Position numbers and translations under genes: made by a program. The notes below the pieces were generated by a model. It was not told where the DNA came from. It searched no databases and saw only the letters and a program-made list of their open reading frames with translations. 40,593 nt of DNA. It comes from Octopus bimaculoides. Its lineage: Eukaryota. The stretch covers positions 20,654,592 to 20,695,184 of the forward strand of contig NC_069005.1 in NCBI RefSeq assembly GCF_001194135.2. The letters are read 5' to 3'. Within the stretch, counting starts at the first letter, position 1. Each line of letters begins with the position of its first letter. Of the stretch, positions 965 to 20,269 are shown piece by piece.

Positions 965-1770
965 CACAAAAAAAACCCACCATAAGTTGGACAAGTTTGA
1001 AGAGGAACTTTAGACAGTTGTTAAGAACATTAAAATAAATAAACACCTTAGGAGGAACTTGCATTTGGAGTACCTTAGCAGAATTACCAGGGAAATTAAC
1101 AGAACAAACGGGATTTTAGTTAAATCGGATAAAACAGGAAACATATATAAACTACATAAACAATATTATCTTGACCTTCTTAAAAAAGAAATAGAAAAAA
1201 ACTACAAAATAACAAATAAGAACATGCTCAGAAAAGCGAATCTTGAAGCTAAGAAGTTAATGAATAACTTCAACCTTTTAAATAGAACTGAACCTCTTAG
1301 TGCCTCAAGAACCACATTTTATCCTGAAAGATCAGAAGAGTAATTTTTGGACTGATCCTTCCTTAAGACTCATTCGCCTGACTAAGTCAGATATAGGGAT
1401 ACTTAATAAGAATATATTAGATAAATATATCCCTACAACAGTTAGGAAATTGAAGCTTCATCTATGATCTAATTCTACACAAATAGTAGAATGGTTTAAA
1501 TTGATCAACGATAAGGAAAATGTGAAATTTATCCAATTCGATATTGCGAATTCTTATCCTTCAATTATACTTAATAAAGCATTGTGGTTTGCACACAATA
1601 AGGCAGGGCTTACAAGGGATGAGATTAATGATATATTAGCTGCTAGAAGATCTTTCATTAAATTCAATAACAAAATTTGGATTCGTAAGGATACCCCAGA
1701 TGCATTTGATGTCCCTATGAGTAGTTCTGATTCAGCACAAATTAGTGATTATATATGTGTGTATAGTTCA
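965..1770 (+). mobile_element. Penelope-like element reverse transcriptase fragment (pseudogenised)
   Basis: KSDKTGNIYK; after frameshift LKDQKSNF...LRLIRLTKSDIG; VEWFK...KFIQFDIANSYPSI; FDVPMSSSDSAQISD (PLE 'FDVTMGSxDGAEVCE'); stops and a frameshift. Confidence 0.85.
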
Positions 1771-2170
1771 GTGGAATCAACCTGCAGCTGTGGTAGCATT
1801 ACTAAAAAAACCGACCATTCAGGTTAGTCACTATATATATGTGTGTGTATAGTTCAGTGGATCAACCTGAAGCTGTGGTAGCATTATTGCAAAGACCGAC
1901 CATTCAGGTTAGAGACTATATATATGTGTGTATAGTTCAGCAGAATCAACCTGAAGCTGTGGTAATATTATTGCAAAGACCGACCATTCAGGTTAGTGAC
2001 TATATATATGTGTGTATAGTTCAGCAGAATCAACCTGAAGCTATGGTAATATTATTGCAAAGACCGACCATTCAGGTTAGTGACTATATATAAGTGTGTA
2101 TAGTTCAGCAGAATCAACCAGAAGCTGTGGTAATATTATTGCAAAGACTGACCATTCAGGTTAGTGACTA
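1742..2170. repeat. 84-bp tandem repeat, 5 units plus start of a 6th, running into an N-gap
   Basis: Units start at 1742, 1824, 1909, 1993, 2077, 2161 (TTAGTGACTATATATATGTGTGTATAGTTCAG...CCGACCATTCAGG). Confidence 0.95.
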
Positions 2171-2892
2171 NNNNNNNNNNNNNNNNNNNNNNNNNNNNNN
2201 NNNNNNNNNNNNNNNNNNNNNNNNNNNNNNNNNNNNNNNNNNNNNNNNNNNNNNNNNNNNNNNNNNNNNNTAGTGGCGCGAAATTATAGCCGCCATTGAG
2301 GAAGTACTATTCTGTGCATGTGCAGGGGACTTCACCACCGGAAGCCCCTCGAGTTGCGCATTCGTAGTAAAACTCGTACTTAAACAGTGGTTTCACTTTG
2401 TTAGGCGAGTTGAGCTCAGACCTTCTACATGGCAACACCTCGCTCCTCCACGAAGCACTTTTCACCATGATGCTATCGATGTGATAGCTACTTGCTTCTC
2501 TGGCAGGCACCAAGGAAGACCTTAACCTTCCATTACCAAAATACAATTCAATCAGTGGCTGCTAAGCTGAATGACAGGAATTTGTATAACCAAGTATCAT
2601 CATAAATAAAACCTTTTTACTATATTGTTAATTGTTCTATTGTCTCTTCATTTATAATGCTGTTGAAAGGTGATAGAGAGACTGAAGTCTCTATGACAAC
2701 TATCAAACCTTTATAGTATATGTGTGTGATTTGATTTTATAAATACTTTCAAATTTACTTCGTTTCCATTTTTCCTTATGTGTAATTTTAATTTATCTGT
2801 AAGGTGAGTGACGAATTTTGATTAATTTATTTTGTAAATCATTATTGTATATTTCTGTGTGTATTTTGTTTTCTAGTTTTCTTCACAGACAA

Positions 2893-3307
2893 TTTTCAGT
2901 CTTTTGTTTTATTTATACCTTTATGGTACACCTGTCTTTTGGGTGTTAAATTCACCTGATGAATCCAGTAATGTGCACAACTCTTCTATAGTAAAATTTT
3001 GTTGTATACCCAATTGAATATTAGCCAATAACCCATTTTCTATAGCGATATTTCAACAAAAATTTTTATAATTCTATATTTTGTTGAATTTACCTATATT
3101 TACCTGTAATTAGAGTCACTTTGTGACAAAAATTTTGGTATAGAATTGGTTGAGAACCTTTCGTTAAATTATCTTCCAAAAATCACAATATGTTGATAAA
3201 TAAAAAAGGAGTTGTTTAATGAAACCAGACTAAATTTATGATTATGTTAGAAATTAATTGAAACACATAAGGGGTGTATTTTGGTTAGAAATATGGTAAC
3301 GAAAGGG
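2893..3307 (+). mobile_element. Right end of a piggyBac-family element
   Basis: Ends GGTAACGAAAGGG|TTAA; closely similar to 29285-29628. Confidence 0.85.
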
Positions 3308-3335
3308 TTAATATTGTATTTATAATTCCACTACT

Positions 3336-3490
3336 CTCTGAGTGGTTGGCGTTAGGAAGGGCATCCAGCTGTAGAAACTCTGCCAAATCAGACTGGAGCC
3401 TGGTGTTGCCATCCGGTTTCACCAGTCCTCAGTCAAATCGTCCAACCCATGCTAGCATGGAAAGCGGACGTTAAACGATGATGATGATGA
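3336..3490 (+). mobile_element. RTE-type LINE/SINE 3' tail ending in (GAT)n
   Basis: GGTTGGCGTTAGGAAGGGCATCCAGC...GGACGTTAAACGATGATGATGA; reverse-complement copy at 23259-23440. Confidence 0.8.
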
Positions 3491-4294
3491 CTACTAAGTT
3501 AATGTAATGTATATTTAAATTTTGTATGGTTTCAATCTGAATGTTACCTACTTTATTTTATTTTATAATTTATTATTTATCTTGATTACATATCCTTAAA
3601 TTATTTCTCAAAATCATTTAAAACATAAAAAAAAATATTACTTGATAGGGTTAATCACAATGATGTAAATTATGTAGATCAAAAACCTTATTTTGACCAT
3701 TAATTTGTATTTCTGCAAGATCTATAATAGGTAATTTTCTTTACATTTCTTTTCTTCTCAAACCCCTAACGGTTTTCTTATTTGATGAAACAGCGCCGTA
3801 AACATGTCATCACTTAATATCCTAGGTTAACAATTGTACTTAGTTACTCTACTATATAACGGTTTTCTTAACCAATATTGCAAGCAGTTTCAATATGTTC
3901 ATGTCAAAACAACCCGATTTGAACTTCTCTACATACATGTAATTTATATACAAATAATAATGTTGTCTGTTGTGAATTAATGTAACTTGGCTCTGAAGAG
4001 ATGGAAGGCCCTAATTTCTAATCTCAGACAAGAGTAAGTCGGGATCTTGCATCAAAATGCACATAGGATAATAAACAAGTTTTATTAATATATAGGATTG
4101 CGTCATGGCTCTTATTTCAATTGATACGCACCCAAAATTGTATCACCTATACGAAAGTTATATTTAAACAAAGTATAAACAAGTTTTCAAGTGTGAATTT
4201 TGCTACTTTGGTAACAGTTACAATACTTAACTTACCAAAATATTTGGTAGATATTTAAATACGCAAATATATATGTGTGTGTATATATATATAT

Positions 4295-4835
4295 CGATTT
4301 GGAGCCCTACAGACAGGAGGCAGAGGCAACTGTGGAACAATCCTGGACAAATTTGAAGGAAGCTACAGTTGGAGTGTACAAAGAGGTTCTGGGAAGACGA
4401 CCAGTGAACAGGAAGCCTTGGATAAGTGACGAGACTTGGCAGAAAGTGGAGGAGAGGAAGATGCTGAAGCAGGAGTTGAACCAAGCCAGAACCCATCAGC
4501 AGAAGCAGGCTGTTGCTAGTAAGTATAGTGAGGCGCTGAGAGAAGTCAAGAAGAAACTAAGGAGAGACAGAAGAACATACTTCAATGAAGTGGCCGACGA
4601 AGTGGAAACAGCAGCGAGGAAAAGAGACTTGATGTCAATATATGCAACAATAAGGTTACTTCCGTCAGACCAGTAAAGGACAAGGCTGGATGGTTGCTAA
4701 CTTCCATTGAGGACCAACTGGCGAGATGGAAGGAACACTCTCAAGAAACATTTTATCGCCCTCCACCTCAATATCTGCAAGAATTGGGGCCAGGGATCCC
4801 GCTCAATATCCACATTGGAGAAATCACCAAAGCCG
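4295..4835 (+). mobile_element. RTE-clade LINE ORF2 fragment (linker between endonuclease and RT)
   Basis: EVLGRRPVNRKPWISDETWQKVEERK...KKKLRRDRRTYF..AARKRD; after a frameshift PVKDKAGWLLTSIEDQLARWKEH. Confidence 0.85.
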
Positions 4836-4847
4836 TGAAGAGCTTAC

Positions 4848-6720
4848 ACCTTTAGTGTTCAAATCGACCGTAACCAGCTAAAATTAATTAATTAAGCTCT
4901 ACAAAATTGCTAAAAAAAACAAACAAATCACATTATTGAATTCTCGTAGCTTTGAGATAATGCCTTTCCCGCCTTTATTCAAGTATAAATACCGTGAAAT
5001 TGTTTAGACCACATGGTTTTTTTAACGTTTGAAGAGAAGTGCTTTCCTTGGTTGTGAAAGAAATGGCATCAGCAAGTAGTGATTCCGACTTTGAAGGATT
5101 TACAATTAATGATACAGAAAATATAAACGAAAACAAAAGTATTTTGTCTTCAGATGAATCTGATATCGATATCAGTGATTTTTCGTCGGACGAGGAAGAG
5201 TTTAATAATGAAAGTGATGAAAATCATAGCGTAAACATGGCAACATGGTCAAAAATCACAACACCAAACACTATCTCGGATTTTACAGAAAACACTGGTC
5301 CACAACATAATTTACCTCCTGATGCTCAACCATTAGACTATCTTTTTATTTTTACCAGAAAGTTTTTATGAAACTGTTGCTGAAGAAAGGGACAAATATG
5401 CACAACGTTTAATTTCTGTTTGTGGAAGAAACGATCCACTGTGGCAGCCAACTAATACTGCAGAAATGAGTGTTTTTTACAATTAATATGTTTGGTGTTA
5501 AACAGCTTCCTTGACTGTGAAACTATTGGAGTCCCGATGTGAGGTATGGTGATCCATATAGCTCAAGCATAATGTCGAAAGCGAGGTATTCGAAAATATC
5601 TCAGTATTTACATTTAACTGATTCTGAAAATGCCCCCAACAAAAACCACCCAAACTACAATCCCCTGTACAAAGTATGCCCTGTACTTAATTTACTTGCA
5701 AATAATTATAGAACTGTATATCTTCCTGGGAAAAATCTCAGTGTAGATGAAACCATGATAGGCTATAAGGGCAGAGTACATTTTCGGCAGTACATGCCTG
5801 CCAAACCTACTAAATGGGGGATCAAGGTATGGGAAGTTTGTGAATTGGAGACGGGATATTGTGTAAACTTCGATGTTTTCACAGGGAAAAAATATAATGG
5901 AAACAGACAGCATGGATTGGGACATGATGTAGTATGGTCTCTCACTGAACCACTGAACCATCAGCACCGACACCTATTTCAACCATTTTCTTTCGTCAGT
6001 GACTTTGGTGGAAAATTTTGCCCGCGTAAGTACTTACATGTGCAGTACTGTTATGAGCAACCGTAAAGGTTTACCCCACGAATGGAAAATAAAATTAAAA
6101 AATAGAGGGGACATTTTACAGATGCAAAAAGAAAATCTATTAATTACTGCTTATAAAGACAAAAGACAGATTTTATTTCTGTCTTCTAATGATCGGGCAT
6201 ATTACCCAGTTGGTCGACCCGGGAAGAAATGGTGGAGGTATATTTTGTGGTTTCTAGTTAATTTAACTATCGTAAATTCATATATTGTATATGTAAAAAG
6301 CCACAAAGTACCTCCACCACCAAAAGACTACGACCACTTGAAATTTTGGGTTGACATCGCATCTCAGTTACTTGAGGGCCTTTCTTCTAGAAAGCACAGA
6401 ACTGAGAGAAAAGCAAAATTAACTGAGGTGGATGTCAGAGAAAATATTGACTTTCATCAAGTCAGAAAGATAAATGGAAGGAAAAAGTTTGCAGACTGTG
6501 TTCGCTGCAAAAGGATATCAAGTCAAGACCTCACATGTGTTCGTTTTCGAAAGCGCCCTTGTATAAAGGATGCTTTGGACAGTTTCACGACAGAAACATA
6601 GCATAAGTGTATAATTTTGTATATTCATTTTCATTTTATTATATAATATGTGAAAGTGAGAACTACATATTAATTTTTAGTATGTTACATATCTGTATTC
6701 ACCTTTGTCTCACCTGTTAA
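4848..6720 (+). mobile_element. piggyBac-family element with disrupted PGBD4-like transposase (5063-6601)
   Basis: Acidic N-terminus SSDSDFEGF; LSVDETMIGYKGR...YMPAKPTKWGIKVW; NRKGLP; AYKDKRQILFLSS; KKWWRYILWFL; Cys-rich tail; several frameshifts and deletions; left end TTAC|ACCTTTAGTGTTCAAA; right TIR not seen. Confidence 0.9.
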
Positions 6721-6746
6721 TGAGATGCATCCTGTTACGTAAATAA

Positions 6747-7840
6747 ATTCCACACTTTCACATCATTTCCTGGCATGTCAACCATCCAAGTAACATACAT
6801 GCTTTCTACTCGCTTAAAAACATTAAGAACATTCCCAAACCTTATGATATAAACGCTACCAAAGTATTCAACCCAAAGGGACTTTGCCATTATCTCATCA
6901 GCGATAAAGAGGAAAGACAAACAATAGCCGCATCGAACATTCAAAAGGAAGGACAATTAGCCTTTCTTAAGCAACTCACAGACAAACCATACAAACAAGA
7001 AGCACACAAGAATTACAAAAACAATGATCAAGTCTCATATACAAACGAAATGATAGTACGTGGCCAAAAACACGATTTCATAAAAAAACTTATGAACCAT
7101 GCTAATTCAACAGAGTCAGGAGATGTAATTACATTCGCGAAAAATACCAACAACATACAAATCAGAAACGAATGAAACGACATATACAAAAACACGCCCA
7201 AGCTTCTCAACCTAATACAATCTGCAGCTACAGAAATAAACATAAAAACAATTACAGTCCCAATATGGCAACAAATTTAACAAAAGAACGAACTATTTGG
7301 AACCACAAACTGCCGATATCACGATGTTCAAACTTCTCTCGATATATATTCGACATGGCTACACCACTATAATTTCAATAAAGGCAAACATTCGAAGTGT
7401 GCCACAAAGTCGACCCCAAAAGTAATGGATTACACATCACAGAAGTATCAAACTCTGTTAAGTCATACATACTAAGATCGATTAAAAACGGACTCATCAC
7501 AACAGGGAGGATGAGATGCCAAGCAAGCGATAATTTTACATTCGGTAGTTGCGTTGACAAGCCTCTTATTTATATGGACGAAATGTGGTTTACCATTAAT
7601 AACATGGAAGAGGCTAAATGTATGCTCGAGGGAACAAACACATTCATAAACGTAAAACATCAAGCAGAAAGAGTCCTCAAGAGAACTCCTAGTATATCCA
7701 CTAGCAATACAGAACCGTGGAGAGTTGTTCAGCAAGAAGAACAAGCCATTAGAAACAGGCTATACTACTACTACTACGAAACATAGAAATCAATGCCTCA
7801 ACTTAAACAATGGGGACAAATCGAATTGAACCCACTCATG
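6747..7840 (+). pseudogene. Endogenous parvoviral element: NS1 (HUH nuclease + SF3 helicase), disrupted
   Basis: PHFHII (HUH, 6753-6761), YLISDK (6891-6908), decayed Walker A EVSNSVKS (7442-7465), Walker B IYMDE (7568-7582), KCMLEG..INVKH, motif C TSN (7700-7708), PWR...IRNRL; stops at 7173, 7278, 7784; frameshift near 7390. Confidence 0.85.
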
Positions 7841-7899
7841 TGTGTGTGTATGTTTGAGCCCACAAAATATGTGTGTGTGTGTGTGTGTATGCGTGTGCA

Positions 7900-8116
7900 C
7901 ACACGTTGTGCATATGTTTATCCCCACCATTTGACAACTGGTGTTGGTGTGTTTAGATCTCCATAACTTGGCAGTTCAGCAAAAGTGACCAAAAGAATAA
8001 GTACCAGGCTTAAAAAAATAAAAGTTCTAGGGTCAATTCATTCGGCTAAATATTCTTCAAAGTGGTGCCCCAGCATAGCCACAGTCTAATGACAAAAACA
8101 AGAAACAAATAAAAGA
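7900..8116 (+). mobile_element. tRNA-derived SINE, 3' half
   Basis: CTTGACAAC..GGTGTGTT..AGAATAAGTACCAGGCT..GGTGCCCCAGCATAGCCACAG tail shared with full copies at 8342, 20060, 36376. Confidence 0.75.
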
Positions 8117-8242
8117 TAATTTAAATACCTTTGGTCATACGCCTACTTGATCAAGCCAGGTAACAACCTTGGTTACTTTTGATAGCAATGGAATGCTTTA
8201 AAGAAGGCATACATAGATACAGATAGATAGTGCAAAATGCAT

Positions 8243-8283
<41 letters not shown>

Positions 8284-8341
8284 AGATGAGTTGAGCAGGC
8301 TAGATATTTATAAAGTAAAACAGGAAGGAAATTTAAACATG

Positions 8342-8715
8342 TAGGCACAGGCATGGCTGTGTGATAAGAAGCTTGCTTCCCAACCACATGGTTGCAGGTT
8401 CAATTACAGTGTGTGACAGCCACAGGCTGACCAAAGCCTTGTGAATGCATCTGGTAAATGGAAGCTAAAAGAAGCCAGTTGTGAGTGTGTATTTATGTGT
8501 GCATGTCTGTGTTTGTCCCTCCCCCCGTCATTGCTTGACAACTGATGCTGGTGTGATGTCCCTGTAACTTAGCAATTTGGCAAAAGAAACTCGAAAGAAT
8601 AAGTACTAGGCTTACAAAGAATAAGTCCTAGGGTCAATTCCATCAACTAAAAGCCTTTAAGGTGGTGCTCCAGCATGGCTGCAGTCAAATGACTGAAATA
8701 AGTAATATAATAAAA
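8342..8715 (+). mobile_element. tRNA-derived SINE
   Basis: Head GGCATGGCTGTGTG (A box), GGTTCAATT (B box), GT-repeat middle, GGTGCTCCAGCATGGC tail. Confidence 0.8.
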
Positions 8716-9159
8716 GAGTACGCAAATTCGGTTGATATTGGAACTGAATATCAGCAGACTAAAGGGGTAAGATTGACAGGGCCAGTGAGTGGACCCATTT
8801 CATTCTTCAGGAACCAATATAAAGGATGAAGCTAGTATTAAGAGTCAAGTTTTCTTCTTTCAGAATCAGCTATGTTGTGTCATTAGAGGGTTGTGGAGAA
8901 CTACTTGATGAGATAGAGGAGGGTCAGGTAAAGGATTAGCACGCTCTAGCATGCTACAAAAGTTTACAAATCATCGAAATATAAAGTATGTCGTTGAACA
9001 GATGTAATGTGGAGTACTAAATGGTAAAAAAAGAAAAAAAAAAGGGTGGGGGGACAGTAAAATATTTTCTGGAATGGTGAAGCAAAATGAGAAAAGGAGT
9101 AAAAAAAAAAAAAAAAAAAAGGGATGGGCAATAGGGTTAGCGTGATGTACAGAAAAATA

Positions 9160-9735
9160 TTGGGTTGGCAAGAAAGTAATTTCTGTTTTTTTTTAGTGTG
9201 AAATAAAAGTCATTTTTTTCAAGCTTCTTAAAGGGTCCAAGACATTTTAAGTGATTTTCGATTGTTGTGTGTGATACATTTAAACTCTCTGCAATCTCTC
9301 GCACAACTATATGACAATAAGATTCAATTATGGTTTTGATTTGGTCATAAAATTCAGTAGGTCGACCAGAACATTGGTCATCTTTGAATGAAAAATCTCC
9401 AGAATAGAATTTTCAAAACAATTTCTGACATGTGCATTGTATTAAGCAATCAACACCATAAACTTCATATATCTCTTTGTGAACCTCAGTTGCTTTCTTG
9501 GCTTTATGGAAATTTAAAAAAATCAAAATATGGTGAAAAATGTTCATTTTTGCACTTTATGCTAAAATTGACACCGAACAGCTGTAAACAAAATTACGTG
9601 CAATTTGCTTCTAAAGTAAGCTAAAAGTAACAGCTATCAATTGTCAAAAGGAAAAAATCATAACACTGACATAAGCCATTAAAAAAAAAAAAATCTCTAT
9701 TTGCAAAAAACGAAATTACTTTCTTGCCAACCCAA
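9160..9735 (-). mobile_element. Internally deleted mariner element (576 bp)
   Basis: Perfect 24-bp TIR TTGGGTTGGCAAGAAAGTAATTTC, TA on both sides; minus strand encodes a mariner N-terminus (HFHHIL...SGDFSFKDDQCSGRPTE...REIAESLNVSHTTIENHLK); no catalytic domain. Confidence 0.9.
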
Positions 9736-10497
9736 TAGACTGAACAACAGCAGGGGTGTGCATACAATATCTACACAGAACAACATGGATTTCATCCATT
9801 CATTCAGGCAAACTTTGAAAAGCTAACAGCCACCTGTTTGTCTATATCATATGGAATGATATGACAGGATCAGTACTTTACACCACATACAATCTCCCAC
9901 AGGGTTTAATTAGCAATATATGATGGTGAATTTTTGTTTCTAAAACATGGCAGGTGGGTATGGGCAATTTGTTAAATTGTGGGAGGTATTTTATCAATTA
10001 GATATATGTAGGTGGCAGGAAAAGTTTTTTTTTTTTTTAATCGAATGATAGAAATATGGTTTTAATGGAAAGGGGTGAGAAGAAGTGGAATGGGGATAAT
10101 TATAGGAATATTTTTAGAAGTGGGGGACTTAATTAGATGAAGGAGGGCTGAAGAAGGGCAAGGGGGATTTTATCATTAGAATAGTGGAAAAAATTTCAAA
10201 ATTTAAAATAAGCTGACACACAAGTGTGTTTCTCAACACACAAAATTCAACCATGAATTAAGAATAAAATCTTGCCAGCCTGGCAGACTTTGTGTGTGTC
10301 TTATACAGAAACAGAACATGCAAAATTTGTAGTCATAAAGGTTATAGACCTTATTAGACAACAAACAGCAATTGAAAATTAAAGGGGGGAAAAAAACAAA
10401 AACAAAAACAAATTCACTGGTAAACATAAACAGGATTCTAGAAACTTCCCTGCTGCTGTGACAAATGCTTGTTGACAACTCAGCTGAAGACTTGGTT

Positions 10498-10578
10498 TCA
10501 TTCTATCTTGCTGTTCTCTATTTGTTTCGTACTCGGAATATAAACTTTAAAGGAGAAATTTGACCGTGAAAAGGATCC
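10498..10578 (-). CDS. POLE2: POLE2 exon 15 (last coding), GSFSRSNFSFKVYIPSTKQIENSKIE*
   Basis: attttcag acceptor, TGA at 10500-10498; matches 'GSF.RS.FSFKV'. Exon sum 1569 nt = 522 aa + stop. Confidence 0.95.
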   Translation of the reverse strand, partial: GSFSRSNFSFKVYIPSTKQIENSKIE

Positions 10579-10679
10579 CTGAAAATATAATTAAAAACAA
10601 TCAATAAGTTGAAAATATGAAACATACAATTAATTCTGATTTCAAATTTTGACACAAGCCAACAATTTTAGGGAAGCGG

Positions 10680-10823
10680 GGTACCTAACTGGTACTTTTT
10701 TTTATCGACCCAAAGAAGATGAAAGGCAGACAGGACCTTGGCGGAATTTGAACTCAGAACGTGAAGATGGACAAAATAGTGCTAAACATTTTGCCCAGAG
10801 TGCTAATGACTGTTAGCTCACCA
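10680..10823 (-). mobile_element. tRNA-derived SINE (second family)
   Basis: Reverse complement of the GAGCT..TTAGCAC..GTTCTGAGTTCAAATTCCGCC family also at about 24445-24595 and 24878-25050. Confidence 0.7.
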
Positions 10824-11279
10824 CCATAAACATTAATTTTGACATGCCAAATAGGAACAAGTGTGGTTAAGAAGTTTACTTTTCAACCACATGCTTTCAG
10901 TTTCAGTCCCACTGTGCAACATGTTGGGCAAGTGTCCTTTACCCTTGCCTCAAGCAAAGGTTTCCGAGTGGATATGGTAGATGGAAACTTAAAGAAGCCC
11001 ATTCATAAAGAACATGTCTGACCATAGGAAAATACTACCTTGCTTGAAAACTGGAGATGGTTGCCTCAACAAATTCAGTGGGACCCAAGGAATCATGGAA
11101 AAGTGGATATTAAAAGAATGATGATGATATACAATGGAAATTATGACTAATGAATAAATATTGTCTTAATCATGGGTTTTTTCATTTTTAATTAAGATCT
11201 AAAAATCAGCCATTAACTTTACACCAACCTGATACCTATGTATGTATGTATGTATGTATGTATGTGTATATCAGATACA

Positions 11280-11448
11280 CACACATACAATGGGCTTCTT
11301 TCGGTTCCCATCTACCAAATCAACTCACAAGGCTTTGGTTGGTCTGAGGCTATAAGAAAAGGCACTTGCCCAAGGTGCCATGCAATGGGACTAAACCCAG
11401 GACCACGTGGTTAGGAACGAAGCTTCCAACCACGCAGCCACACCTGCA
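11280..11448 (-). mobile_element. tRNA-derived SINE head, inverted
   Basis: Reverse complement of the 8342/36376 SINE 5' half. Confidence 0.75.
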
Positions 11449-12304
11449 CTATATGCACAAACATTTTCTGTTATGATATGCATGTTTTCCTAAAAAAAAA
11501 CAAAAAAACAAATTTGTCCTCAAATACTTTATGTAACCTCTGTGTGTGTGTGTTTGAGTCATGGACTCTCCCATGATGTACAAGGCTTTGGCAATATCTT
11601 GTCAAACAACCATACAGATGATTTGTTTATAGTGATCAAATGCTTGTGTTCACACAAGCTCACTCCCTCCATCATATGGACATTACCTGTACAGGTGCAC
11701 CATGTGCCACATGACGAAATGATCGCAGAGCAAAATGAAATGAGGTGCTTTGCTCAAGAATACAATGCAACACCTGGTCTGGGAATTGAACCCACAATCT
11801 CGCAATATATATAAGGTATAAATAATGGTCATTACATATTTTTACTGTAGTAAATTTGACTTACAGCCGTTTCCAGTAATCATTATAGTTACGTTATAAA
11901 TAGATTTGTTCAATCAGTCCACTGATTGGTTGGGAGATATTGAACAACCTAAAAAATTAATACTACTTTTGTCCGAGTCATTTCTGGTTATCTGATCAAA
12001 TGATTTTCCTTCATTTTGCTGACATGAATTGACCTCTCCTCATCACATGAGATTTCTACCAGATGTTTTTGTGGACAACCTATCAATAACAAACCTATGG
12101 TGACTACTGGAAACAGCTGTATGTCAAACTTACTGCAATAAAGGAAAATTATGTAATGACCATTATTTCAAACTTGTCTTGTATATCACTGTGTAAAAGA
12201 CCAGTATAACCAGAGCACAACCACAGATTTACAATATAGAATGGTGATGAACTATAACCTCGGACCCTGCCACAAGAATACAGAGTTCTTTACAATATTG
12301 TTAG

Positions 12305-12672
12305 TTGTTGGCACTCCGTCGCTTACGATGTCGAGAGTTCCAGTTGATCCGATCGTGAAATTAACGTACAAGTGGCTGAGCACTCCACAGACACGTGTAC
12401 CCTTAACGTAGTTCTCGGGGATATTCAGCGTGACACAGTGTTACAAGGTTGACCCTTTGAATTACAGGTACAACAGAAACAGGAAGAAAGAGTGAGAGAA
12501 AGTTGGGGTGAAAGAGTACAGCAGGGTTCACCACTGTCCCCTGCCGGAGCCTCGTGGAGCTTTAGGTGTTTTCGCTCAATAAACACTCACAATGCCCGGT
12601 CTAGGAATCGAAACCGCGATCCTATGACTGCAAGTCCGCTGCCTTAACCACTGGGCCATTGCGCCTCCACTC
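12305..12672 (-). mobile_element. Young tRNA-derived SINE (third family) with ~13-bp target-site duplication
   Basis: Head GGCGCAATGGCCCAGTGG (A box), GGTTTCGATTCC (B box); CpGs intact; ACAATATTGTTAG at 12292-12304 and 12673-12685. Confidence 0.85.
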
Positions 12673-12832
12673 ACAATATTGTTAGCTTGGTGTACTAACA
12701 GAGAGCTTATAAAGTATTTTGATAATTCCTCACTAATAACTCACGTGTGTTTGCATGTGTGTGTATGTATAAGGTGGAAAGCCTGTGAGATAACTACACA
12801 ACAAAACAAAAAACTGTTAATGTGTTACTTAC

Positions 12833-13009
12833 AGGATTTGTTATGATGCAGTCAAGAGAATTTACTGTGAAACCATCATATTTGCCAGCGCATACAAGTA
12901 AATCTGGCAAGGGATAGAGCTGCAAGCCACAGTCATAGGCCCAATAAACTGGACATACATGAAGTGGTAGTGGACAGAGGTGACCCTGGGACACTATAGT
13001 TTTAGCAAA
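12833..13009 (-). CDS. POLE2: POLE2 exon 14, [59 protein letters not shown]
   Basis: gattttcag acceptor, GTAAGT donor, 177 nt; signature '[18 protein letters not shown]'. Confidence 0.97.
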
Positions 13010-13299
13010 CTGAAAATCAAGAAAGAAACAATGGTCAGAAATCAGATTATGTATTTACATACGAAGGAAGGAATGTCTCAAGAAATTCTGTCCAACTCAA
13101 ACTTGAAAAAAATGGACATAAAAACTATTATAAAGCTGATTATTATAAAACTATTATAAAGCTGATTATGCAAACACAATAAGACTGAATCAACATCATC
13201 ATCATCATTTTACTTCTACTTTTACATGCTTGTATGAACAGAGTTTACTGCAGCAAATTTTCTATGTCCAGATACCCTGCCTGTTGCCAAGCTATTTCA

Positions 13300-13656
13300 T
13301 TCTGTTTTACTTTTATGGTACACCTATCTTATGTGCATTAAGTTCAACTGATAGATAATTCAGTAATTTGTACAATTCTTCTATATTAAAATTTTGTTGT
13401 AAGCTCATTTTCTATGCTGGTGTTTAAACAAAATTTAAATAATTTTACATTTTGATCAATTTACCTGTAATGAGGTAAAAATTATGAAAAAGACTTGCTT
13501 AAGAGCCTTTTATTAAATTGTGTTTAAAAACAATCACATTTGTATGTTGACAGCTACAAAAGTTAGAGTTGTTTTATTAAACCAGTCTAAATTCACGATT
13601 ATTTAAATGAAACACATAAGGGGTATATTTTGGTTAGAAATATAGTAATGAAAGGG
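13300..13656 (+). mobile_element. Older, degraded right end of the same piggyBac family as 2893-3307 and 27959-29628
   Basis: TTTATGGTACACCT...GGTTAGAAATATAGTAATGAAAGGG|TCAA. Confidence 0.75.
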
Positions 13657-13822
13657 TCAAGAGAACCCTTCACTCCACACAGCCCAAAAAATGGCACATA
13701 GTAAAATTGCATCAACTTAAAGAGTTAGTGCTTTCCTTTATTTTAGATGCCATTTACAAATCAATTCCAATTATAGTCAGCAGAAATGAAGAATAAAAAG
13801 AAGATATGACAGAAATACTTAC

Positions 13823-14006
13823 ATGAGTAGGCACATCGCCAGAGGTAGGAAATCTGATACAACTGCGACAAAGCTTGGTAACAATATCTTCTCGAAAGAC
13901 AACAATCTCTTGTGTACAATATTGGATCCGACAAGGATTGCTGGTGAATATTGCATGAGGGATTTTCTTCCGGAAATATTCTGTGATAGAGTTGGGAATG
14001 GCAGGT
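13823..14006 (-). CDS. POLE2: POLE2 exon 13, PAIPNSITEYFRKKIPHAIFTSNPCRIQYCTQEIVVFREDIVTKLCRSCIRFPTSGDVPTH
   Basis: gatttgcag acceptor, GTAAGT donor, 184 nt; signature 'NPCRIQYCTQEI.VFRED'. Confidence 0.97.
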
Positions 14007-14054
14007 CTGCAAATCAAAGGCAAAGAAATGTAAAAGATTCCATAATGACACAGG

Positions 14055-14395
14055 TTGTGTGGTTAAGAAGCTCACTTTACAAGTATATGGTTGTGGGTTC
14101 AGTCTCACTGTGCAGCATCTTGGGTAAGTGCGTTCTACTAACCCTCAGGTAGGCTAATGCCTTGTGAGTGAATGTGGCAGGCAGAAACTGTATGGAAGCC
14201 TACTGTCACTTGATAACCAGTGTTGGTTTGTTTACATCCCTGTAACATTAGCAGTGTAGCAAGAGGCTAATAGTATGAGTAACAGACTTAGAAATACGTA
14301 TTGTATTCAATTTGCTTGACTAAACACTTCAAGTAGTACCCCAGCATGGTCACAGTCCAATGACCAAAACAAGTAAAAGATAAAAACAAAAAGAA
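14055..14395 (+). mobile_element. tRNA-derived SINE (degenerate)
   Basis: GGTTGTGTGGTTAAGAAG..GGGTTCAGTCTCACTG head and CCCAGCATGGTCACAG..AAGTAAAAGATAAA tail. Confidence 0.7.
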
Positions 14396-14729
14396 AATGA
14401 TAAAAAAAAGAAAGAGAAAAGTTTATTAAACACGGATGTAAGGTATGGTGATACGGCTAAGAAATTCACTTCTCAACCAAGTGGTTCTATGTTTGATCCC
14501 ACTGTGGAGTACCTTGAGTGCTTTCTGCCATAACCTTAGGTGGACTGATATTTTGTGGAATAGAATTTGGTAGAAGGAAGCAATGCAAAAGCCTGTTGCC
14601 TGTGTGTATCAATGTGTTAGAAACATTATGTATTGTTCAGCACCAGGTGGAACATGTGGTCAAACAAAAGCATTGCAGCCACAACCATCACTTCACAGGA
14701 ATACTTCCAACATATATGCCATTATTTAA

Positions 14730-14906
14730 CCCTTTAGCATCTAAACTAGCCATATCCAGTTAAAAAATCTATCCTATGTACAAACTGGCCAGATCCAGCC
14801 TCTCACACCTACCCTACAATGCCATTCCAAAAATAATCACATCACTGAAATTTCAAAGAGACGAGATAAGTATTACATTTGATAAAGTAATCTGAATGCT
14901 AAAATG
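14730..14906 (+). mobile_element. piggyBac-type MITE (~180-210 bp family)
   Basis: TTAA|CCCTTTAGCAT...AATGCTAAAATG|TTAA; same-orientation relatives at 15249-15435, 15907-16120, 16262-16467. Confidence 0.8.
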
Positions 14907-15701
14907 TTAAAACAATACAGGTGTGGTTTGAAAGAAATTTAGCTTCATTTTCTAAAAGGTTGTCCTCATCACCATTTAACGTCCACCTTCCATGCTGGCA
15001 TGGGTTGGACAGTTTGACCGGAACTGACCAGGCAGGAGCCTGCACCAGACTTGTGTGTCTGTTTTTACAGCTGGATGTCCTTCCTTTACAGTGTGGACTG
15101 GATTACTTTATGTAGCATCAACATGCATGCTTGAAAATGAAGAAAATTTATTTAATCAACTGATGTTGGTGTTTTCTAACCTTTTTTTCAAGTAGTACCC
15201 CTGTATGGCTTTGAATATCAAATTATTTTAGTGTTTCTTGTGTTTTAACCATTTAAACCAACCATATCCGGCCCAAATATTCTACTTGTTTTATGTTCAA
15301 ACTGCCAAGATCTGGCCTCTTACACCTACCCTATAATGTCATTGTAAAAATATACAATCACATCATCAAAATCTCAAAACAATGAGATAATGCATAATTA
15401 ATTCAAAATGACGTCAATAAATAAGCATCATATTATGAATATAAGTTACTCATAAACGATGTAAATAAATAAGAAATTGCATTTGATAGCAGCTTATTTC
15501 TTCACATCATTATGTGAATGGTAATAAGAAACTATGCAATTTCTGTCAAATTGCATGACAGAATAATCTGATACTCTATTGTGAATCAATGCTAAGAGTC
15601 AATGATGGGACATTGCTACACAAATTCTATGATGTGTGAAGCTATGTGGCACATTTTTCACAGTATATGGTGTCATTTGATAGAAAGTATGTGATACTTA
15701 C

Positions 15702-15816
15702 CGAGGGAGTATGTTCGTAGGTCCTGGGTCCAATGGACCTGGGACAAATATGAACCTACAACAGTCCTTAAGATTCTGGTATTTACAGATTATATCACAC
15801 AATTCAATAAATGATT
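15702..15816 (-). CDS. POLE2: POLE2 exon 12, (E)SFIELCDIICKYQNLKDCCRFIFVPGPLDPGPTNILP(R)
   Basis: ttttttcag acceptor, GTAAGT donor, 115 nt; signature 'RF.FVPGP.DPG...ILPR'. Confidence 0.95.
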
Positions 15817-15906
15817 CTGAAAAAACAATACAAGATATATTTTTATTATTATTATTGATAATATAATGGAGTGGTGGTAAAAGAGCAAACAGTTGTATTT
15901 CATTAT

Positions 15907-16120
15907 CCTTTTAGCATTCAAACTGACCATATCCAGCCCAAATGTTCTGCTTTATATTCTAACCAACCATATATGGCCTCTCACATCTATCCTACAATAA
16001 TATTCTAAAAATAAAACAATCACATCATTGAAATCTCAAGGCTATGAGATAATGCATGATTAATTCAAAATAATATGAATCTACAAATATATTTGAAAGA
16101 ATCATCTGAATGCTAAAGGG
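15907..16120 (+). mobile_element. piggyBac-type MITE copy
   Basis: CCTTTTAGCATTCAAAC...TGAATGCTAAAGGG termini; body shared with 14730 copy. Confidence 0.8.
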
Positions 16121-17475
16121 TTATATTTATCTTGAGTTCAAATCCTGCTATGATCAAATATACAGCCAAAATATTCTACCAGCTTTGTGTTCATATTAAC
16201 CAGATCCAGACTATCACACCTACCCTTGCCATGATCAAATTTACTTTCATTCATCACCATCAACTTTTTAACATTTAAATAGGCCATTTCTGGCCAAAAT
16301 AATCCGATCAGCCAAATCCAGCCTCTCACACTTATCTGACAATGTGATTCTAAAAATATACAATCACATCACTGAAATCTCAAAGTTACGAGATAAAGCA
16401 TGATTAATTCAAAACAATGTAAGTGAATAAGTATTACATTTGACGAAGTAATCTAAATGCTAAAGGATTAAGTAAGCTTGTTGCCACTTTAAGATTCGCT
16501 GATGAGGTCTAATAAGATAGAAACATGTCAGCAAGTGAATTTCTTAACCACTTGTTGTCCAATTTAGACATGTATTTATCTATTATATGTATATATGTAA
16601 GAAGTAAAAGAGATAAGTCCAGGCAGATATGTATAAAGCACTTAGTGTTAAACCAATTTGGTTAACTATATCAGGCAACTGGACACCGATAAATGCAAGT
16701 AGAATAAACATCCAAGGTAATTCCTCATGAACGACAAGGAAATCCAAACACACAGCTCTCTTTATATATTTCATGTTATGCTTAAAAGTAATGTATGTTA
16801 CCAGAATTGTCTGGCTTGAGTAGAACAAACCACTCCAAATCCTTTTTAGAGTATTCATGTAAATGAAGGACTGATCAGCCCATACTGGCATAGAGTCATA
16901 TAACAATAAAGCCAGGCCAAGTAATGATATTTTGAATGCATTTAATACATAGATATTATACACATTATGCAATAGGTAAAAAGGAATTCCTTATTTACAC
17001 AATATATTTCTGAGTTAAGACATTTCAAAATATAAACAGTACGATAGAATTTGCCTTTTATATATGGTCTTCAACAGTTTAAATCATCTATTAGTTGAGG
17101 GGAGGATGTAGCCAGAAGGGGTGAAATATCTATAGAAAGGGAGTGATATGTAGACATGAGATAAAAAGAAACATGAGGTGAAACTAAATCAGAGAAGAAA
17201 ATAAGAATAAGGATTAACAAAATAAAATAGAAACATTGAAAGCATGGAATTTTTAAAAGAAAAGCCTTAAACTGAAGATATGTAAGAGATGAATTCCCTT
17301 TTTATCTATTGCATAATGATCTGAAACATACATATTAAATGTATTCAAAATATCATTCCTTGATTTGACTATTATTATACATACATAGAAAGATATATAT
17401 TTCAATCAACAATCAGTGTTCATGTATTAGCATATCTGTGCCACAGATGCAAGGCTGAAAAAGACTATATATTAC

Positions 17476-17596
17476 CTCGAAGTATTTTGGTGTGATTGGC
17501 CTGGTGACACAGCGACGTGAAGTTACCACAAAAAACAAATGCAACAGGGGGGTGTTCAGAATAACCACTAAACAACACCTTTAATTTGTCAACCAC
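17476..17596 (-). CDS. POLE2: POLE2 exon 11, VVDKLKVLFSGYSEHPPVAFVFCGNFTSLCHQANHTKILR
   Basis: ttttag acceptor, GTAATA donor, 121 nt; signature 'PP..F..CGNF'. Confidence 0.95.
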
Positions 17597-18089
17597 CTAA
17601 AAGACAAAAATAAATAAATAACAATTTCTAACATAAGTACAAGGATCTAAATTTTGGAGGTACGGATATAAACAATTAGACTAACACCAGAATAGGATTG
17701 CTCTTTTAGTAAATCACAACAGCATTTCACTTCAGAAAGGAAGTGAATGCAACAATTTAGCCCACTACTTTATTAATTTGTCAATACAGTTAATTCTGTC
17801 ATTCTTCCTGTAACATTTTATTTTTTATCTTTTACTTATTTCAGTCATTGGACTGCAGCCTTGTGCAGGCATCATCATCAAAGGTTTAGCAGAAAGAAAC
17901 GGCCACACTACTTATTGTCCTTAAGGTCATTATTAATTTAGTCTCTTTTGCCAATCGGATAAGATACGGGAATATAAACAAACCAACACCAGTTGTCAAG
18001 TGGTGGTACAACAAACACACAAATACCCATGTACATATATACAAATACAATGTGATGCAGATGGATGAGGACAGTTTATAAAAGTACCA

Positions 18090-18440
18090 ATCGCTTAAAG
18101 TGAAAGCAAGTTGTGGAAGATGGAGACCCAAGAAGACATGGAACGAAGTACTGAAGGCCAATTTCTAAATGAACTTTACAAAGGAGATAACAGAGGACCA
18201 AGATACCTGGTGCAATGCTGTACTCAAGAAGACCTGCCAACCACAACAGAATTGAGATCCTAAAACCAAGACGCCACATAGAAAGCACAGGTGCTGGTGT
18301 CACATATTAGGAAGAGCATCCAGCCATAGAAAACAAACTAAAACAGAGTATGGAACCTGGTGTGGCCCCTGGCCATACCAGTTCCTGTCGAGCTGTCCAA
18401 TTCATGCCAGCATGGAAAACAGGTATTAAATGATAATGAT
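18090..18440 (+). mobile_element. RTE LINE 3' end fragment
   Basis: Decayed 'CGR.RPKKTW.EV' coding tail followed by CCAGCATGGAAAAC..TAAATGATAATGATGAT tail. Confidence 0.65.
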
Positions 18441-18544
18441 GATGTATATATTGCATAGAGTCAAAAGTTGTGCAACATTTTGGTAACGTATTTACTTTCT
18501 TTGTTAAGTTACAACAAAAGCAACTTAGCATTCAAAGTAGAGTG

Positions 18545-18650
18545 TTGCACCATCTGAAGCCATCTTTCTGCCAGAACTTTGATCTCATTCTGATGCCAGT
18601 TCTTGTTCAAGGTGAAGAACTCCACCACTGCTGCTTCCACTGAAAAGCAT
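18545..18650 (-). mobile_element. mariner transposase C-terminal fragment
   Basis: Minus strand VEAAVVEFFTLNKNWHQNEIKVLAERWLQMVQH resembles the mariner 'FF.SK...Y..GI..L..RW' tail. Confidence 0.6.
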
Positions 18651-19266
18651 TATTAAAGAGGACAGACTTAAATACCATTGGTTTCCACATCAATTTCACA
18701 ACTTGACTAAAATTTATATATTCCAAAGATCAGCCCTTCACTCTAGCACCTTTAACCAGGTGGCACCATCATCATTTTCACATCCACACAAGGGTTTGAT
18801 AGAATATACTAAGGCAAATTTCATATGGCCAAATGCCATCCTGTTGCCAACCCTGATATGTTTCTGAGGAAAGTAATATTTCCCCATAACCAGACATGTT
18901 TTCATTGAAGATTGGAAACAAAGGACACTGCTTGTATGACAGTGACACTCATTTACAACTATCACGTGAAGTCAAGACAAGGAGACAGTCACACACATAA
19001 TATACACATACACAATGGTATTCTTTCAATTTCCACCTACCAAATCTATTCACAAGGCTTTGAATAGCCCAGGGCTATAACAGACACTTGTCCAAGGTGT
19101 CATGCAGTGGGACTGAACCTAAAACCATGTGGTCGAAAAGCAAACTGTTACCATATAACTACACCTGCAAATTTTAAAAAGTAAACCAAAGAGAGTCTTT
19201 ATGGGATTGCTAACCTTGCAAGAAATAGCATCCAAATTTTCCTTCAAATCACAATCTTATCGTTAA

Positions 19267-19450
19267 CCCTTTAGCACTGAGATTACTCTGTCAAATGTTA
19301 TATCTATTCATTCACATTGTTGTGAATTAATCATGCATTTTGGTGGTGTGATTGTTTCATTTTCAGAATGCTGTGAGAGGCTGGACCATGCAAGTCAGAG
19401 CATAAAACAGAATACACGGGCTGAATTTGGATGATTTGAATGCTGAAGGG
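19267..19450 (-). mobile_element. piggyBac-type MITE, inverted relative to the 14.7-16.5 kb copies
   Basis: TTAA|CCCTTTAGCACTGAGATTACTCTGTCAAATG...AATGCTGAAGGG|TTAA; begins with the reverse complement of the other copies' 3' end. Confidence 0.8.
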
Positions 19451-19633
19451 TTAAAAAGATGACACACTGAAATGCTTTTTATTTCATATATATATATGTA
19501 TATATCTATATATATTTCAGTGAGAATGGTTTTGTTATACAGCACCGTATTTTACAATCCTGTAAATAATAATAAAGATATTTTTATATAAGCTTAGAGT
19601 TTATGGCGTTCACTGTTGGGGTTGTATACTTAC

Positions 19634-19775
19634 TTTGGGCTCATCTAACCAAACGTCAGACAGAAAGACAAACATGGACTCTTGATTTTCAACTTCAAGG
19701 TGACGCAGTTTGTCTGAAGCCTTAGCACAAGTTTTGAGAGGACCTCCAAAGAAGTTAATGTTGCCAAAATAGGAC
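19634..19775 (-). CDS. POLE2: POLE2 exon 10, [47 protein letters not shown]
   Basis: ccttgcag acceptor, GTAAGT donor, 142 nt; signature '[11 protein letters not shown]'. Confidence 0.97.
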
Positions 19776-20059: not shown

Positions 20060-20223
20060 ACATGGCTGTGTGATAAGAAGCTTGCTTCCCAACCACATGA
20101 CACCAGGTTCAGTCCCACTGCATGGCACCTGGAGCAAGTGTCTTCTAATATAACCTTGGGTTGACTAAAGCCTTGTGAGTGGATTTGGTAGACGGAAACT
20201 GAAAGAAGCCCATCGTGTGTGTT

Positions 20224-20269
<46 letters not shown>

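What the first reader, a model, noticed from the sequence alone, without database searches (positions are those of the whole stretch)
6747..7840. Endogenous parvovirus NS1 covering both nuclease and helicase domains
Seen: about 1.1 kb reads, through three stops and one frameshift, as HUH motif PHFHII, catalytic-Tyr motif YLISDK, then an SF3 helicase. The helicase has Walker A EVSNSVKS (both glycines one substitution from GxSNSGKS), Walker B IYMDE, B' KCMLEG..INVKH, motif C TSN, PWR...EEQAIRNRL, and a tail *KSMPQLKQWGQIELNPLM. The ORF track shows only the helicase part. Established: this HUH+SF3 order defines parvoviral NS1/Rep. Inference: the PWR..EE..RNR tail recalls Hamaparvovirinae-like NS1, so it may record an undescribed mollusc-infecting lineage. 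No capsid gene or terminal hairpin is visible.
Basis: partly seen in the sequence, partly recalled or inferred. Interest (0 to 1): 0.85.

Follow-up and report, generated by a model that had tools for sequence, protein, structure and literature searches.

The report
Decayed parvovirus replicase gene fragment
This 1.1-kb stretch is a dead, doubly truncated copy of a parvovirus replication gene (NS1) lying between transposon remains in an animal genome, a known kind of viral fossil that here comes from a parvovirus lineage I found described nowhere.

Summary
Window 6747-7840 (+) reads, in two frames as they stand, as a parvoviral NS1/Rep fragment. The helicase part matches Pfam Parvo_NS1 (E 5e-12, above cut-off), and its best solved relative is AAV2 Rep. 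The upstream part hits no library. It does align to the N-terminal domains of related elements and of full-length NS1 proteins, with the HUH motif and the Tyr position in register (hhalign 95%).

The gene is non-functional. It carries three in-frame stops and one frameshift, has a degenerate Walker A, and lacks about 100-115 codons at its 5' end and its C-terminal tail. No capsid gene or hairpin remains. It lies in a gap-free block between a broken piggyBac-like transposase and a dispersed repeat, so it is endogenous rather than a contaminant.

It belongs to an exclusive clade of fragmentary copies that I found only in assemblies of sequencing runs. Differences between copies are saturated at synonymous sites but conservative at the protein level, which points to separate captures from a diversified virus lineage. 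The nearest full-length relatives are about 33% identical in the helicase. They sit on unclassified contigs of about 4 kb whose capsids resemble the IHHNV capsid. This indirectly supports the "Hamaparvovirinae-like" guess. Host taxon and POLE2 adjacency were not verified. It is a new member of a known kind, of moderate interest.

The parts
6747..7840 (+). Fragment of a parvoviral NS1/Rep gene: the nuclease-domain remnant from the HUH motif onward, the linker, the SF3 helicase and the start of the C-terminal tail. It is broken by 3 in-frame stops and 1 frameshift and is truncated at both ends. Walker A departs from the family pattern at two near-invariant positions.
   Evidence: frames; Pfam Parvo_NS1 E 5.2e-12; the match spans about 7397-7738; AAV2 Rep; relatives map collinearly to 6747-7858 in two frames; N-part alignment, hhalign 95.1%; counts.
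5039..6601 (+). Upstream neighbour: remnant of a piggyBac-type transposase gene, split over three ORFs (at least two frame disruptions), on the same strand as the NS1 fragment.
   Evidence: PF13843 DDE_Tnp_1_7, E 1.9e-33 and 1.7e-8; ORFs. No terminal inverted repeats were found that would enclose it alone or together with the NS1 fragment.
6602..6746 (.). AT-rich spacer between the transposase remnant and the first base that is homologous to NS1 relatives. Its origin is unassigned.
   Evidence: no relative aligns upstream of 6747; no N-terminal NS1 remnant anywhere else in the window.
7841..7912 (.). (TG)n-rich tract at which homology to NS1 relatives stops. This is the 3' breakpoint of the fragment.
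   Evidence: relatives continue with a conserved tail that the window lacks.
7913..8116 (+). Downstream neighbour: a short dispersed repeat (SINE-like) with at least 8 copies in the window. It marks the flank as host-type repetitive DNA.
   Evidence: copies at 8535-8717, 17818-18006, 20291-20431, 20790-20974, 21140-21325, 32020-32205 and 40045-40105, at 68-81% identity.

Best explanation
The stretch is an endogenous parvoviral element: a piece of the NS1 (replication initiator) gene of a parvovirus that became part of the host chromosome and has since decayed. In the virus, NS1 nicks the origin of the viral DNA with its N-terminal HUH nuclease and unwinds it with its SF3 helicase. Here nothing of that can work as a protein. 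The gene has lost its first 100-115 or so codons and its C-terminal tail. It has three stops and one frameshift, and its ATP-binding loop is degenerate. The likely history is as follows. A fragment of viral DNA was joined into a chromosome break in a germ-line cell (inferred). The insert was either partial from the start or was later cut back by insertions of mobile elements on both sides (inferred from the piggyBac-like remnant and the dispersed repeat at its ends). It then drifted neutrally, by roughly 5% per site judging from the stop count (rough inference). It is one of several separate captures from a diversified and otherwise unsampled parvovirus lineage.
For: Shown: The helicase piece matches Parvo_NS1 above the Pfam cut-off. 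Its best solved relatives are AAV2 Rep40/68, with papillomavirus E1 weaker. The exhaustive profile search gives 1043 hits, and the named ones are parvoviral non-structural proteins or NS1-like genes in animal genomes. The N-part aligns with the N-terminal domains of family members and with 27 full-length NS1-like proteins (hhalign 95.1%, E 3e-8). The HUH motif is in register, and both its histidines are invariant in 27 of 27. A model of the nearest full-length relative superposes on full-length AAV2 Rep68 over about 535 columns. Decay: 3 stops, 1 frameshift, both ends truncated, no other NS1 or VP remnant in the window and no hairpins. Integration: the fragment and both repeat-bearing flanks lie in one N-free block, 2271-20270. 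Separate captures: between copies pN is 0.19-0.24 while pS is 0.77-0.93, which is saturated, and no DNA homology extends beyond the NS1 region. The family is an exclusive clade. It was found only in assemblies of sequencing runs, not in IMG/VR or JGI metagenomes.
Against: The N-part has no direct hit in Pfam, the PDB or the word-index search. A structure model of a family N-domain was too poor to use (pLDDT 47), so the nuclease fold rests on transitive homology. The Tyr column is not conserved across all relatives. I could not check read-level support for the junctions, the host taxon or orthologous copies. The age estimate rests on three events. It is unknown whether the related contigs come from the same species as the window.
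Confidence: 0.9

Rival explanations
1. Assembly artefact or contamination: reads from an exogenous virus were mis-joined into a host scaffold.
For: The window is a draft scaffold with four N runs. No exact or orthologous copy of this element turned up in the protein collection; the best relative is 72-79% identical.
Against: The coding sequence is broken and truncated at both ends, and there is no capsid gene or terminus. It is flanked without gaps by a transposase remnant and by a repeat that has at least 8 copies elsewhere in the window. A live virus contaminant would be intact.
Confidence: 0.03
2. The helicase belongs to a non-parvoviral element, such as a Helitron, a Polinton or a CRESS-DNA virus Rep.
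For: HUH nuclease plus SF3 helicase is also the architecture of CRESS-DNA Reps (established knowledge). A weak N-terminal profile hit goes to the plasmid RepB HUH domain (E 0.011).
Against: Every significant hit is parvoviral: Pfam Parvo_NS1, AAV2 Rep and B19 NS1 in the PDB, and parvoviral NS proteins in BFVD. No Helitron or CRESS Rep family was returned for any piece. The nearest full-length relatives sit on contigs of about 4 kb next to IHHNV-like capsid genes.
Confidence: 0.01
3. The fragment is dead as a protein but still acts as RNA, for example as a source of antiviral small RNAs or as part of a host transcript. This is not exclusive of the main explanation.
For: Related copies were recovered from many sequencing runs, some of which may be transcriptomes. 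The fragment lies in a transposon-rich region, the usual setting of small-RNA clusters in other invertebrates (established knowledge; cf. PMC6085071).
Against: No expression data were available. Rfam found nothing. The library type of the runs is unknown. Nothing in the sequence calls for a function.
Confidence: 0.12
4. The copy arose by duplication or transposon-mediated movement of an older insert inside the genome, for example as cargo of the adjacent piggyBac-like element, and not by its own capture from a virus.
For: The fragment starts 145 bp after the stop of a piggyBac-type transposase, on the same strand. One related contig also has a piggyBac-like piece upstream (L001, E 4e-4).
Against: No inverted terminal repeats enclose the transposase and the fragment. 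The window holds a single copy. Copies share no flanking DNA. They differ by saturated synonymous change with conserved protein, the signature of divergence while still under selection. In L001 a different part of the transposase adjoins the NS1 piece, so the arrangement is not shared.
Confidence: 0.07

Closest known systems
Adeno-associated virus 2 Rep68/Rep40 (solved structures 1s9h, 1u0j, 7jse, 9bc5, 9rm5)
   Same: It is the best solved relative of the window's helicase piece (E 6e-7) and of the family profile (E 1.5e-11). Walker B, B' and motif C are in register. A model of the nearest full-length relative aligns to full-length Rep68 across both domains.
   Different: Identity is only about 15-22%. 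The window copy is broken, truncated and has a degenerate Walker A. The N-terminal domain gives no sequence-level hit to any solved parvoviral nuclease domain.
Unclassified contigs of about 4 kb that carry a full-length NS1 (P0039/P0175, P0044/P0178, P0041; loci L010, L013, L015), and the bird-faeces 'Parvoviridae sp.' non-structural proteins (QTE03882.1, QTE03754.1, QTE03847.1)
   Same: They are the nearest full-length relatives by helicase profile (E 1e-38 to 1e-31). P0039/P0175 is also nearest by the nuclease-domain profile. They share the HFH-type HUH motif, the Tyr-Leu motif and the conserved tail after the helicase.
   Different: Identity to the window is only about 33% over 160 helicase residues. 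They have intact genes next to a capsid gene, whereas the window has neither intact genes nor a capsid gene.
IHHNV (Penstylhamaparvovirus; Hamaparvovirinae in the 2020 taxonomy, Penbrevirinae since 2025 according to PMC13426907)
   Same: The capsid-like proteins next to the nearest full-length relatives hit Pfam IHHNV_capsid at the same profile region (E 1.8e-5, 6.6e-5 and 4e-3). Genome-sized contigs of about 3.8-4.2 kb fit the 3.9 kb quoted for that genus (PMC11357303). IHHNV NS1 is among the structural matches (rank 22).
   Different: All three capsid hits fall just under the Pfam cut-off. NS1 identity is 17% or less in the structural alignment. The window itself has no capsid sequence to compare. 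The helicase tree shows no specific sister group.
Parvovirus-related sequences in mollusc genomes and transcriptomes, including Octopus bimaculoides KOF81493 (Francois et al. 2016, PMC5013282), and IHHNV-derived EVEs in crustaceans (PMC12287923)
   Same: They are the same kind of object: NS1-derived, often broken viral inserts in invertebrate genomes. The 2016 paper already noted mollusc sequences that branch outside all known genera.
   Different: The published octopus sequence is a different lineage. It has no match in the window, and its best match among my fetched proteins is P0125 at 38%. I found no paper that describes the present family.

Membership tests
Parvoviridae NS1/Rep protein family | SF3 helicase domain that matches the curated Parvo_NS1 model above its gathering score | tested here: met
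   PF01057, E 5.2e-12, 45.8 bits (cut-off 20), profile positions 105-217 of 271. Relatives P0002 and P0039 match at E 3e-14 and 5e-23.
Parvoviridae NS1/Rep protein family | Walker A, B, B' and C motifs in order | tested here: met
   All four positions are in register with AAV2 Rep and with the family. Walker B, B' and C are kept. Walker A in the window departs from the family pattern at two near-invariant positions, so the motif is present but degenerate.
Parvoviridae NS1/Rep protein family | Rolling-circle motif II (HUH) upstream of the helicase at the family's usual distance | tested here: met
   The window has His-Phe-His followed by two hydrophobic residues at its 5' end. This is in register with family members and with 27 full-length relatives in which both histidines are invariant. 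The spacing to Walker A is about 231 codons, against 219-252 in relatives.
Parvoviridae NS1/Rep protein family | Rolling-circle motif III (catalytic Tyr) | tested here: inconclusive
   The window has Tyr in the aligned column, and in the P0039 model that residue lies on a helix. However, the column is Tyr in 13 and His in 14 of 27 full-length relatives, so its catalytic role is not established.
Parvoviridae NS1/Rep protein family | N-terminal domain with the HUH-endonuclease fold | tested here: inconclusive
   The profile of the family N-part finds nothing in the PDB. The AF2 model of P0021 has pLDDT 47. Indirect evidence: the P0039 model aligns with full-length Rep68, and there is a weak profile hit to the RepB HUH domain (E 0.011).
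Endogenous viral element (endogenous parvoviral element) | Virus-derived sequence that is incomplete and disrupted | tested here: met
   There are 3 stops and 1 frameshift, both ends are truncated, and there is no VP, no other NS1 remnant and no hairpin.
Endogenous viral element (endogenous parvoviral element) | Physically continuous with host chromosomal DNA | tested here: met
   In the assembly it lies in one N-free block, 2271-20270. It has a piggyBac-type remnant upstream and, downstream, a dispersed repeat with at least 8 copies in the window. Read-level support could not be checked.
Endogenous viral element (endogenous parvoviral element) | Inherited: an orthologous copy at the same locus in other individuals or species | not testable with these tools
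   No eukaryotic genome collection could be searched by DNA. The closest protein relative is 72-79% identical and sits in unrelated flanks.
Hamaparvovirinae sensu 2020 (now Hamavirinae, Penbrevirinae and Hepanvirinae) | NS1/SF3 helicase clusters with reference members in a phylogeny | tested here: inconclusive
   Reference sequences could not be fetched by name. Among 134 helicases from the profile search the family is an isolated clade, with in-family distances of 0.28-0.54 and all others at 0.67 or more. The named structural matches of the nearest full-length relative lean towards ichthama- and chaphamaparvoviruses, but ambidensoviruses and Parvovirinae follow closely.
Hamaparvovirinae sensu 2020 (now Hamavirinae, Penbrevirinae and Hepanvirinae) | Genus-level criterion: NS1 identity of 35-40% or more over at least 80% coverage to a member (PMC11357303) | tested here: not met
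   Named NS1 matches of the nearest full-length relative are 14-22% identical. The window reaches only about 33% even to unclassified relatives, and only in the helicase core. It also retains only about 60% of an NS1.
Hamaparvovirinae sensu 2020 (now Hamavirinae, Penbrevirinae and Hepanvirinae) | Capsid of the IHHNV/hama type | not testable with these tools
   The window has no capsid sequence. In the nearest full-length relatives, three capsid-like proteins hit PF16530 just below the cut-off.
   No such family was returned for any piece. Every significant hit is parvoviral, with papillomavirus E1 as a weaker second.

The most novel reading that the evidence does not exclude
The fragment is one of several independent germ-line captures from a long-lived parvovirus lineage that has never been sampled as a virus. 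That lineage ranks at least as a new genus and is distantly allied to the viruses of about 4 kb with IHHNV-type capsids. If the window and the related datasets are cephalopod, it would be the first sequence record of a parvovirus clade that infects cephalopods.
Probability: 0.4. Interest if true: 0.5.

Novelty: new member of a known kind. Interest (0 to 1): 0.35.

Why it matters
Parvovirus fossils in animal genomes are the main record of the deep history and host range of this virus family. Mollusc hosts are barely sampled, and I found no paper in the searched library that describes a cephalopod parvovirus. This fragment and its relatives form a self-contained NS1 clade whose copies diverged under purifying selection. 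That implies a diversified virus lineage that met these hosts repeatedly. The fragment gives paleovirologists a dated-in-principle marker, because its age could be set by presence or absence of the locus across species. It also gives virus discovery a probe for an unsampled lineage. It is not surprising in kind: such elements are common in invertebrates, and one in an octopus genome was reported in 2016.

Tried and rejected
- The word-index homology search with the N-part found nothing.
- Pfam and PDB sequence searches with the N-part, or with its family profile, found nothing significant.
- The AlphaFold model of a family N-domain (P0021, 11-sequence alignment) had pLDDT 47. I did not use it for fold search.
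- Scans of IMG/VR and JGI metagenomes with family-specific peptide patterns found no relatives.
- A literature search for the sequencing-run accessions, meant to name the host species, found nothing.
- Searches for cephalopod or octopus parvovirus literature gave only the 2016 survey.
- Rfam found no match in the window.
- Low-stringency searches for further NS1 N-terminal, C-terminal or capsid remnants in the window gave only chance-level hits.
- Searches for hairpins, and for transposon terminal repeats around the element, found none.
- Long ORFs elsewhere in the window had no Pfam family, so I confirmed no host gene.
- The idea that the published octopus sequence KOF81493 is this element was rejected.
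- The idea that the copies are recent duplicates was rejected on saturated synonymous divergence.

Full report
**1. What is in the sequence**

I translated the three + frames of 6700-7900 as they stand. From 6747, one frame reads PHFHII and then, about 45 codons later, YLISDK. A second frame takes over further on. It carries a Walker A-like EVSNSVKS, then IYMDE, KCMLEG..INVKH and TSN, and then a short tail that ends in ELNPLM at 7840.

Relatives map collinearly onto exactly these two frames.

**2. The helicase half**

- The piece hits Pfam PF01057 Parvo_NS1 at E 5.2e-12 (45.8 bits, cut-off 20). Papillomavirus E1 helicase is a weak second.
- The best solved relatives are AAV2 Rep40/Rep68 (E 6e-7), with Walker B, B' and motif C in register.
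- A profile of the piece and 19 relatives again finds only AAV Rep in the PDB (E 1.5e-11).
- The relatives keep the canonical P-loop. The window copy departs from it at two near-invariant positions.

**3. The upstream half**

This half has no hit of its own in Pfam, in the word-index protein search or, as a family profile, in the PDB. It is identified through relatives.

- A related contig (L007) has an ORF (P0020) whose HFH motif aligns to the window from 6747.
- Nine further relatives (P0021-P0029) conserve the same block.
- The window piece aligns with them through the HUH motif, the Tyr-Leu motif and the linker, at 38% identity to P0021 and 44.5% over 191 residues to P0033.
- A profile-profile comparison of this family alignment with 27 full-length NS1-like proteins gives 95.1% probability (E 3e-8, 157 columns), with HUH and the Tyr column in register.
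- In those 27 proteins both HUH histidines are invariant. The Tyr column, however, is Tyr in 13 and His in 14. The 'catalytic Tyr' label is therefore plausible, not proven.
- HUH and Walker A are about 231 codons apart, inside the 219-252 range of full-length relatives.

Evidence on the fold is indirect:

- A model of the nearest full-length relative (P0039, pLDDT 74.8) aligns to full-length AAV2 Rep68 over about 535 columns.
- The N-terminal part of the full-length profile weakly hits the HUH domain of plasmid RepB (E 0.011).
- A model of a family N-domain alone was too poor to use (pLDDT 47).

**4. Extent and state**

- Relatives have about 100-115 residues upstream of HUH that the window lacks, and homology starts at 6747.
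- At the 3' end homology stops at 7840, where a (TG)n tract begins. Relatives continue with a conserved hydrophobic stretch and a Cys/His-rich C-terminus.
- About 60% of an NS1 therefore survives.
- Low-stringency searches found no other NS1 piece and no capsid-like sequence anywhere in the 40.6 kb. There are no hairpin-like inverted repeats.
- The share of single-base changes that would create a stop in this sequence is 0.050. Three stops then suggest about 0.055 substitutions per site since inactivation, with a Poisson range of 0.011-0.16. This is a rough inference only.

**5. Surroundings**

- Upstream (5039-6601, same strand) lies a piggyBac-type transposase remnant split over three ORFs (PF13843, E 1.9e-33 and 1.7e-8). 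A 145-bp AT-rich spacer follows it.
- Downstream (7913-8116) lies a short dispersed repeat with at least eight copies in the window.
- The scaffold has N runs at 2171-2270, 20271-20280, 28309-29234 and 38636-39102. None lies between 2271 and 20270, so the fragment and both flanks are in one gap-free block.
- No terminal inverted repeats enclose the transposase, with or without the NS1 fragment, so I see no support for a cargo model.
- I could confirm no host gene. The POLE2 neighbourhood and the cephalopod origin remain untested.

**6. The family**

- The 19 helicase relatives and 10 N-domain relatives all come from assemblies of public sequencing runs, from at least six run series. All are short ORFs on contigs of 4.3 kb or less. 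Several of these contigs visibly carry frame breaks and non-viral flanks.
- None was found in IMG/VR or JGI metagenomes.
- DNA similarity to the window is confined to about 300 bp of the helicase core, at 67-73%.
- Codon comparison of the window's helicase ORF with six relatives gives pN 0.19-0.24 but pS 0.77-0.93, which is saturated. The relatives compared among themselves give the same picture.
- Such a pattern arises while a gene is under purifying selection. The copies therefore descend from different, long-diverged viral genomes and are not duplicates of one insert.
- In a neighbour-joining tree of 134 helicases (127 columns), the window and 12 family members form an exclusive clade. In-family distances are 0.28-0.54, and every other sequence is at 0.67 or more.

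**7. Which parvoviruses?**

- The exhaustive profile search gave 1043 hits (25 below 1e-30). The best full-length ones are P0039/P0175, P0041, P0043 and P0044/P0178.
- The few named neighbours are unclassified 'Parvoviridae sp.' non-structural proteins from bird faeces, plus NS1-like genes in a bivalve (Mactra antiquata) and a spider genome.
- The family's nuclease-domain profile picks out the same P0039/P0175 cluster.
- These relatives sit on contigs of 3.8-4.2 kb. There, a protein of about 430 residues hits Pfam IHHNV_capsid at the same profile region in three independent cases (E 1.8e-5, 6.6e-5 and 4e-3). All three fall just under the cut-off.
- Structure search of the P0039 model against viral proteins lists unclassified bird-associated NS proteins first, then ichthama- and chaphamaparvovirus NS1, with IHHNV NS1 at rank 22. 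Identities are 14-22%, and ambidensoviruses and Parvovirinae follow closely.
- The 'Hamaparvovirinae-like' guess is thus indirectly supported. No genus-level criterion is met (35-40% NS1 identity over 80% coverage, PMC11357303), and the subfamily has since been split (PMC13426907).

**8. Prior knowledge and verdict**

Francois et al. 2016 (PMC5013282) already reported parvovirus-related sequences in six molluscs, including the Octopus bimaculoides genome and protein KOF81493. They also noted mollusc sequences that branch outside the known genera. That octopus sequence is a different lineage from the present one. I found no description of the present family.

It is a new member of a known kind of object, of moderate interest.

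Noticed in passing
window 5039-6601 (+): Remnant of a piggyBac-type transposase gene split over three ORFs (Pfam DDE_Tnp_1_7). It lies directly upstream of the NS1 fragment on the same strand. No terminal inverted repeats were found.
   Followed up: partly
window 28238-28308 (+), next to the N run 28309-29234: A second ORF start resembles the acidic N-terminus of the 5039 transposase ORF (Ser/Glu-rich, ...FEGF...). It runs straight into an assembly gap and may be another piggyBac-like copy.
   Followed up: no
window 7913-8116, 8535-8717, 17818-18006, 20291-20431, 20790-20974, 21140-21325, 32020-32205, 40045-40105: A short dispersed repeat of about 190 bp (SINE-like), often preceded by a TG-rich tract, with at least eight copies at 68-81% identity. 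Rfam gave no match.
   Followed up: partly
window 1742-2170: A tandem array of an 84-bp unit (5.1 copies, 92% matches) that abuts the 100-base N run at 2171-2270.
   Followed up: no
loci L010 (422-1738, 2231-3853) and L015 (480-1784, 2113-3801): On the contigs of about 4 kb that hold the nearest full-length NS1 relatives, the capsid-like gene lies upstream of NS1 on the same strand. This is the reverse of the usual parvoviral order. It could be a permuted assembly of a repeated or concatemeric form, or a real difference in gene order.
   Followed up: no
alignment A4 (27 full-length NS1-like proteins), column of the motif III Tyr: Fourteen of the 27 full-length relatives have His where the other 13, and the window, have Tyr. 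The flanking pattern, including a nearly invariant Arg a few residues on, is conserved. Either the catalytic Tyr sits elsewhere in those proteins or the alignment is off by a turn.
   Followed up: partly
loci L007 3554-3856, L011 near 1450-1556, L012 1369-1866; proteins P0039 and P0044 C-termini: Relatives share a Cys/His-rich motif near the NS1 C-terminus, possibly a small zinc-binding module. The window copy has lost this part. No Pfam family matched it.
   Followed up: no
protein P0095 (KAL4217968.1, Mactra antiquata, on a 27-Mb scaffold) and P0108 (KAF8789558.1, Argiope bruennichi): Long NS1-like open reading frames (728 and 798 residues) are annotated as host proteins in a bivalve and a spider genome. 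They are further endogenous parvoviral genes and may be intact.
   Followed up: no
locus L001 1143-1433: One related NS1 contig also has a piggyBac-like piece upstream (DDE_Tnp_1_7, E 4e-4, below the cut-off). It is a different part of the transposase from the one in the window, so this is probably coincidence in transposon-rich DNA.
   Followed up: partly
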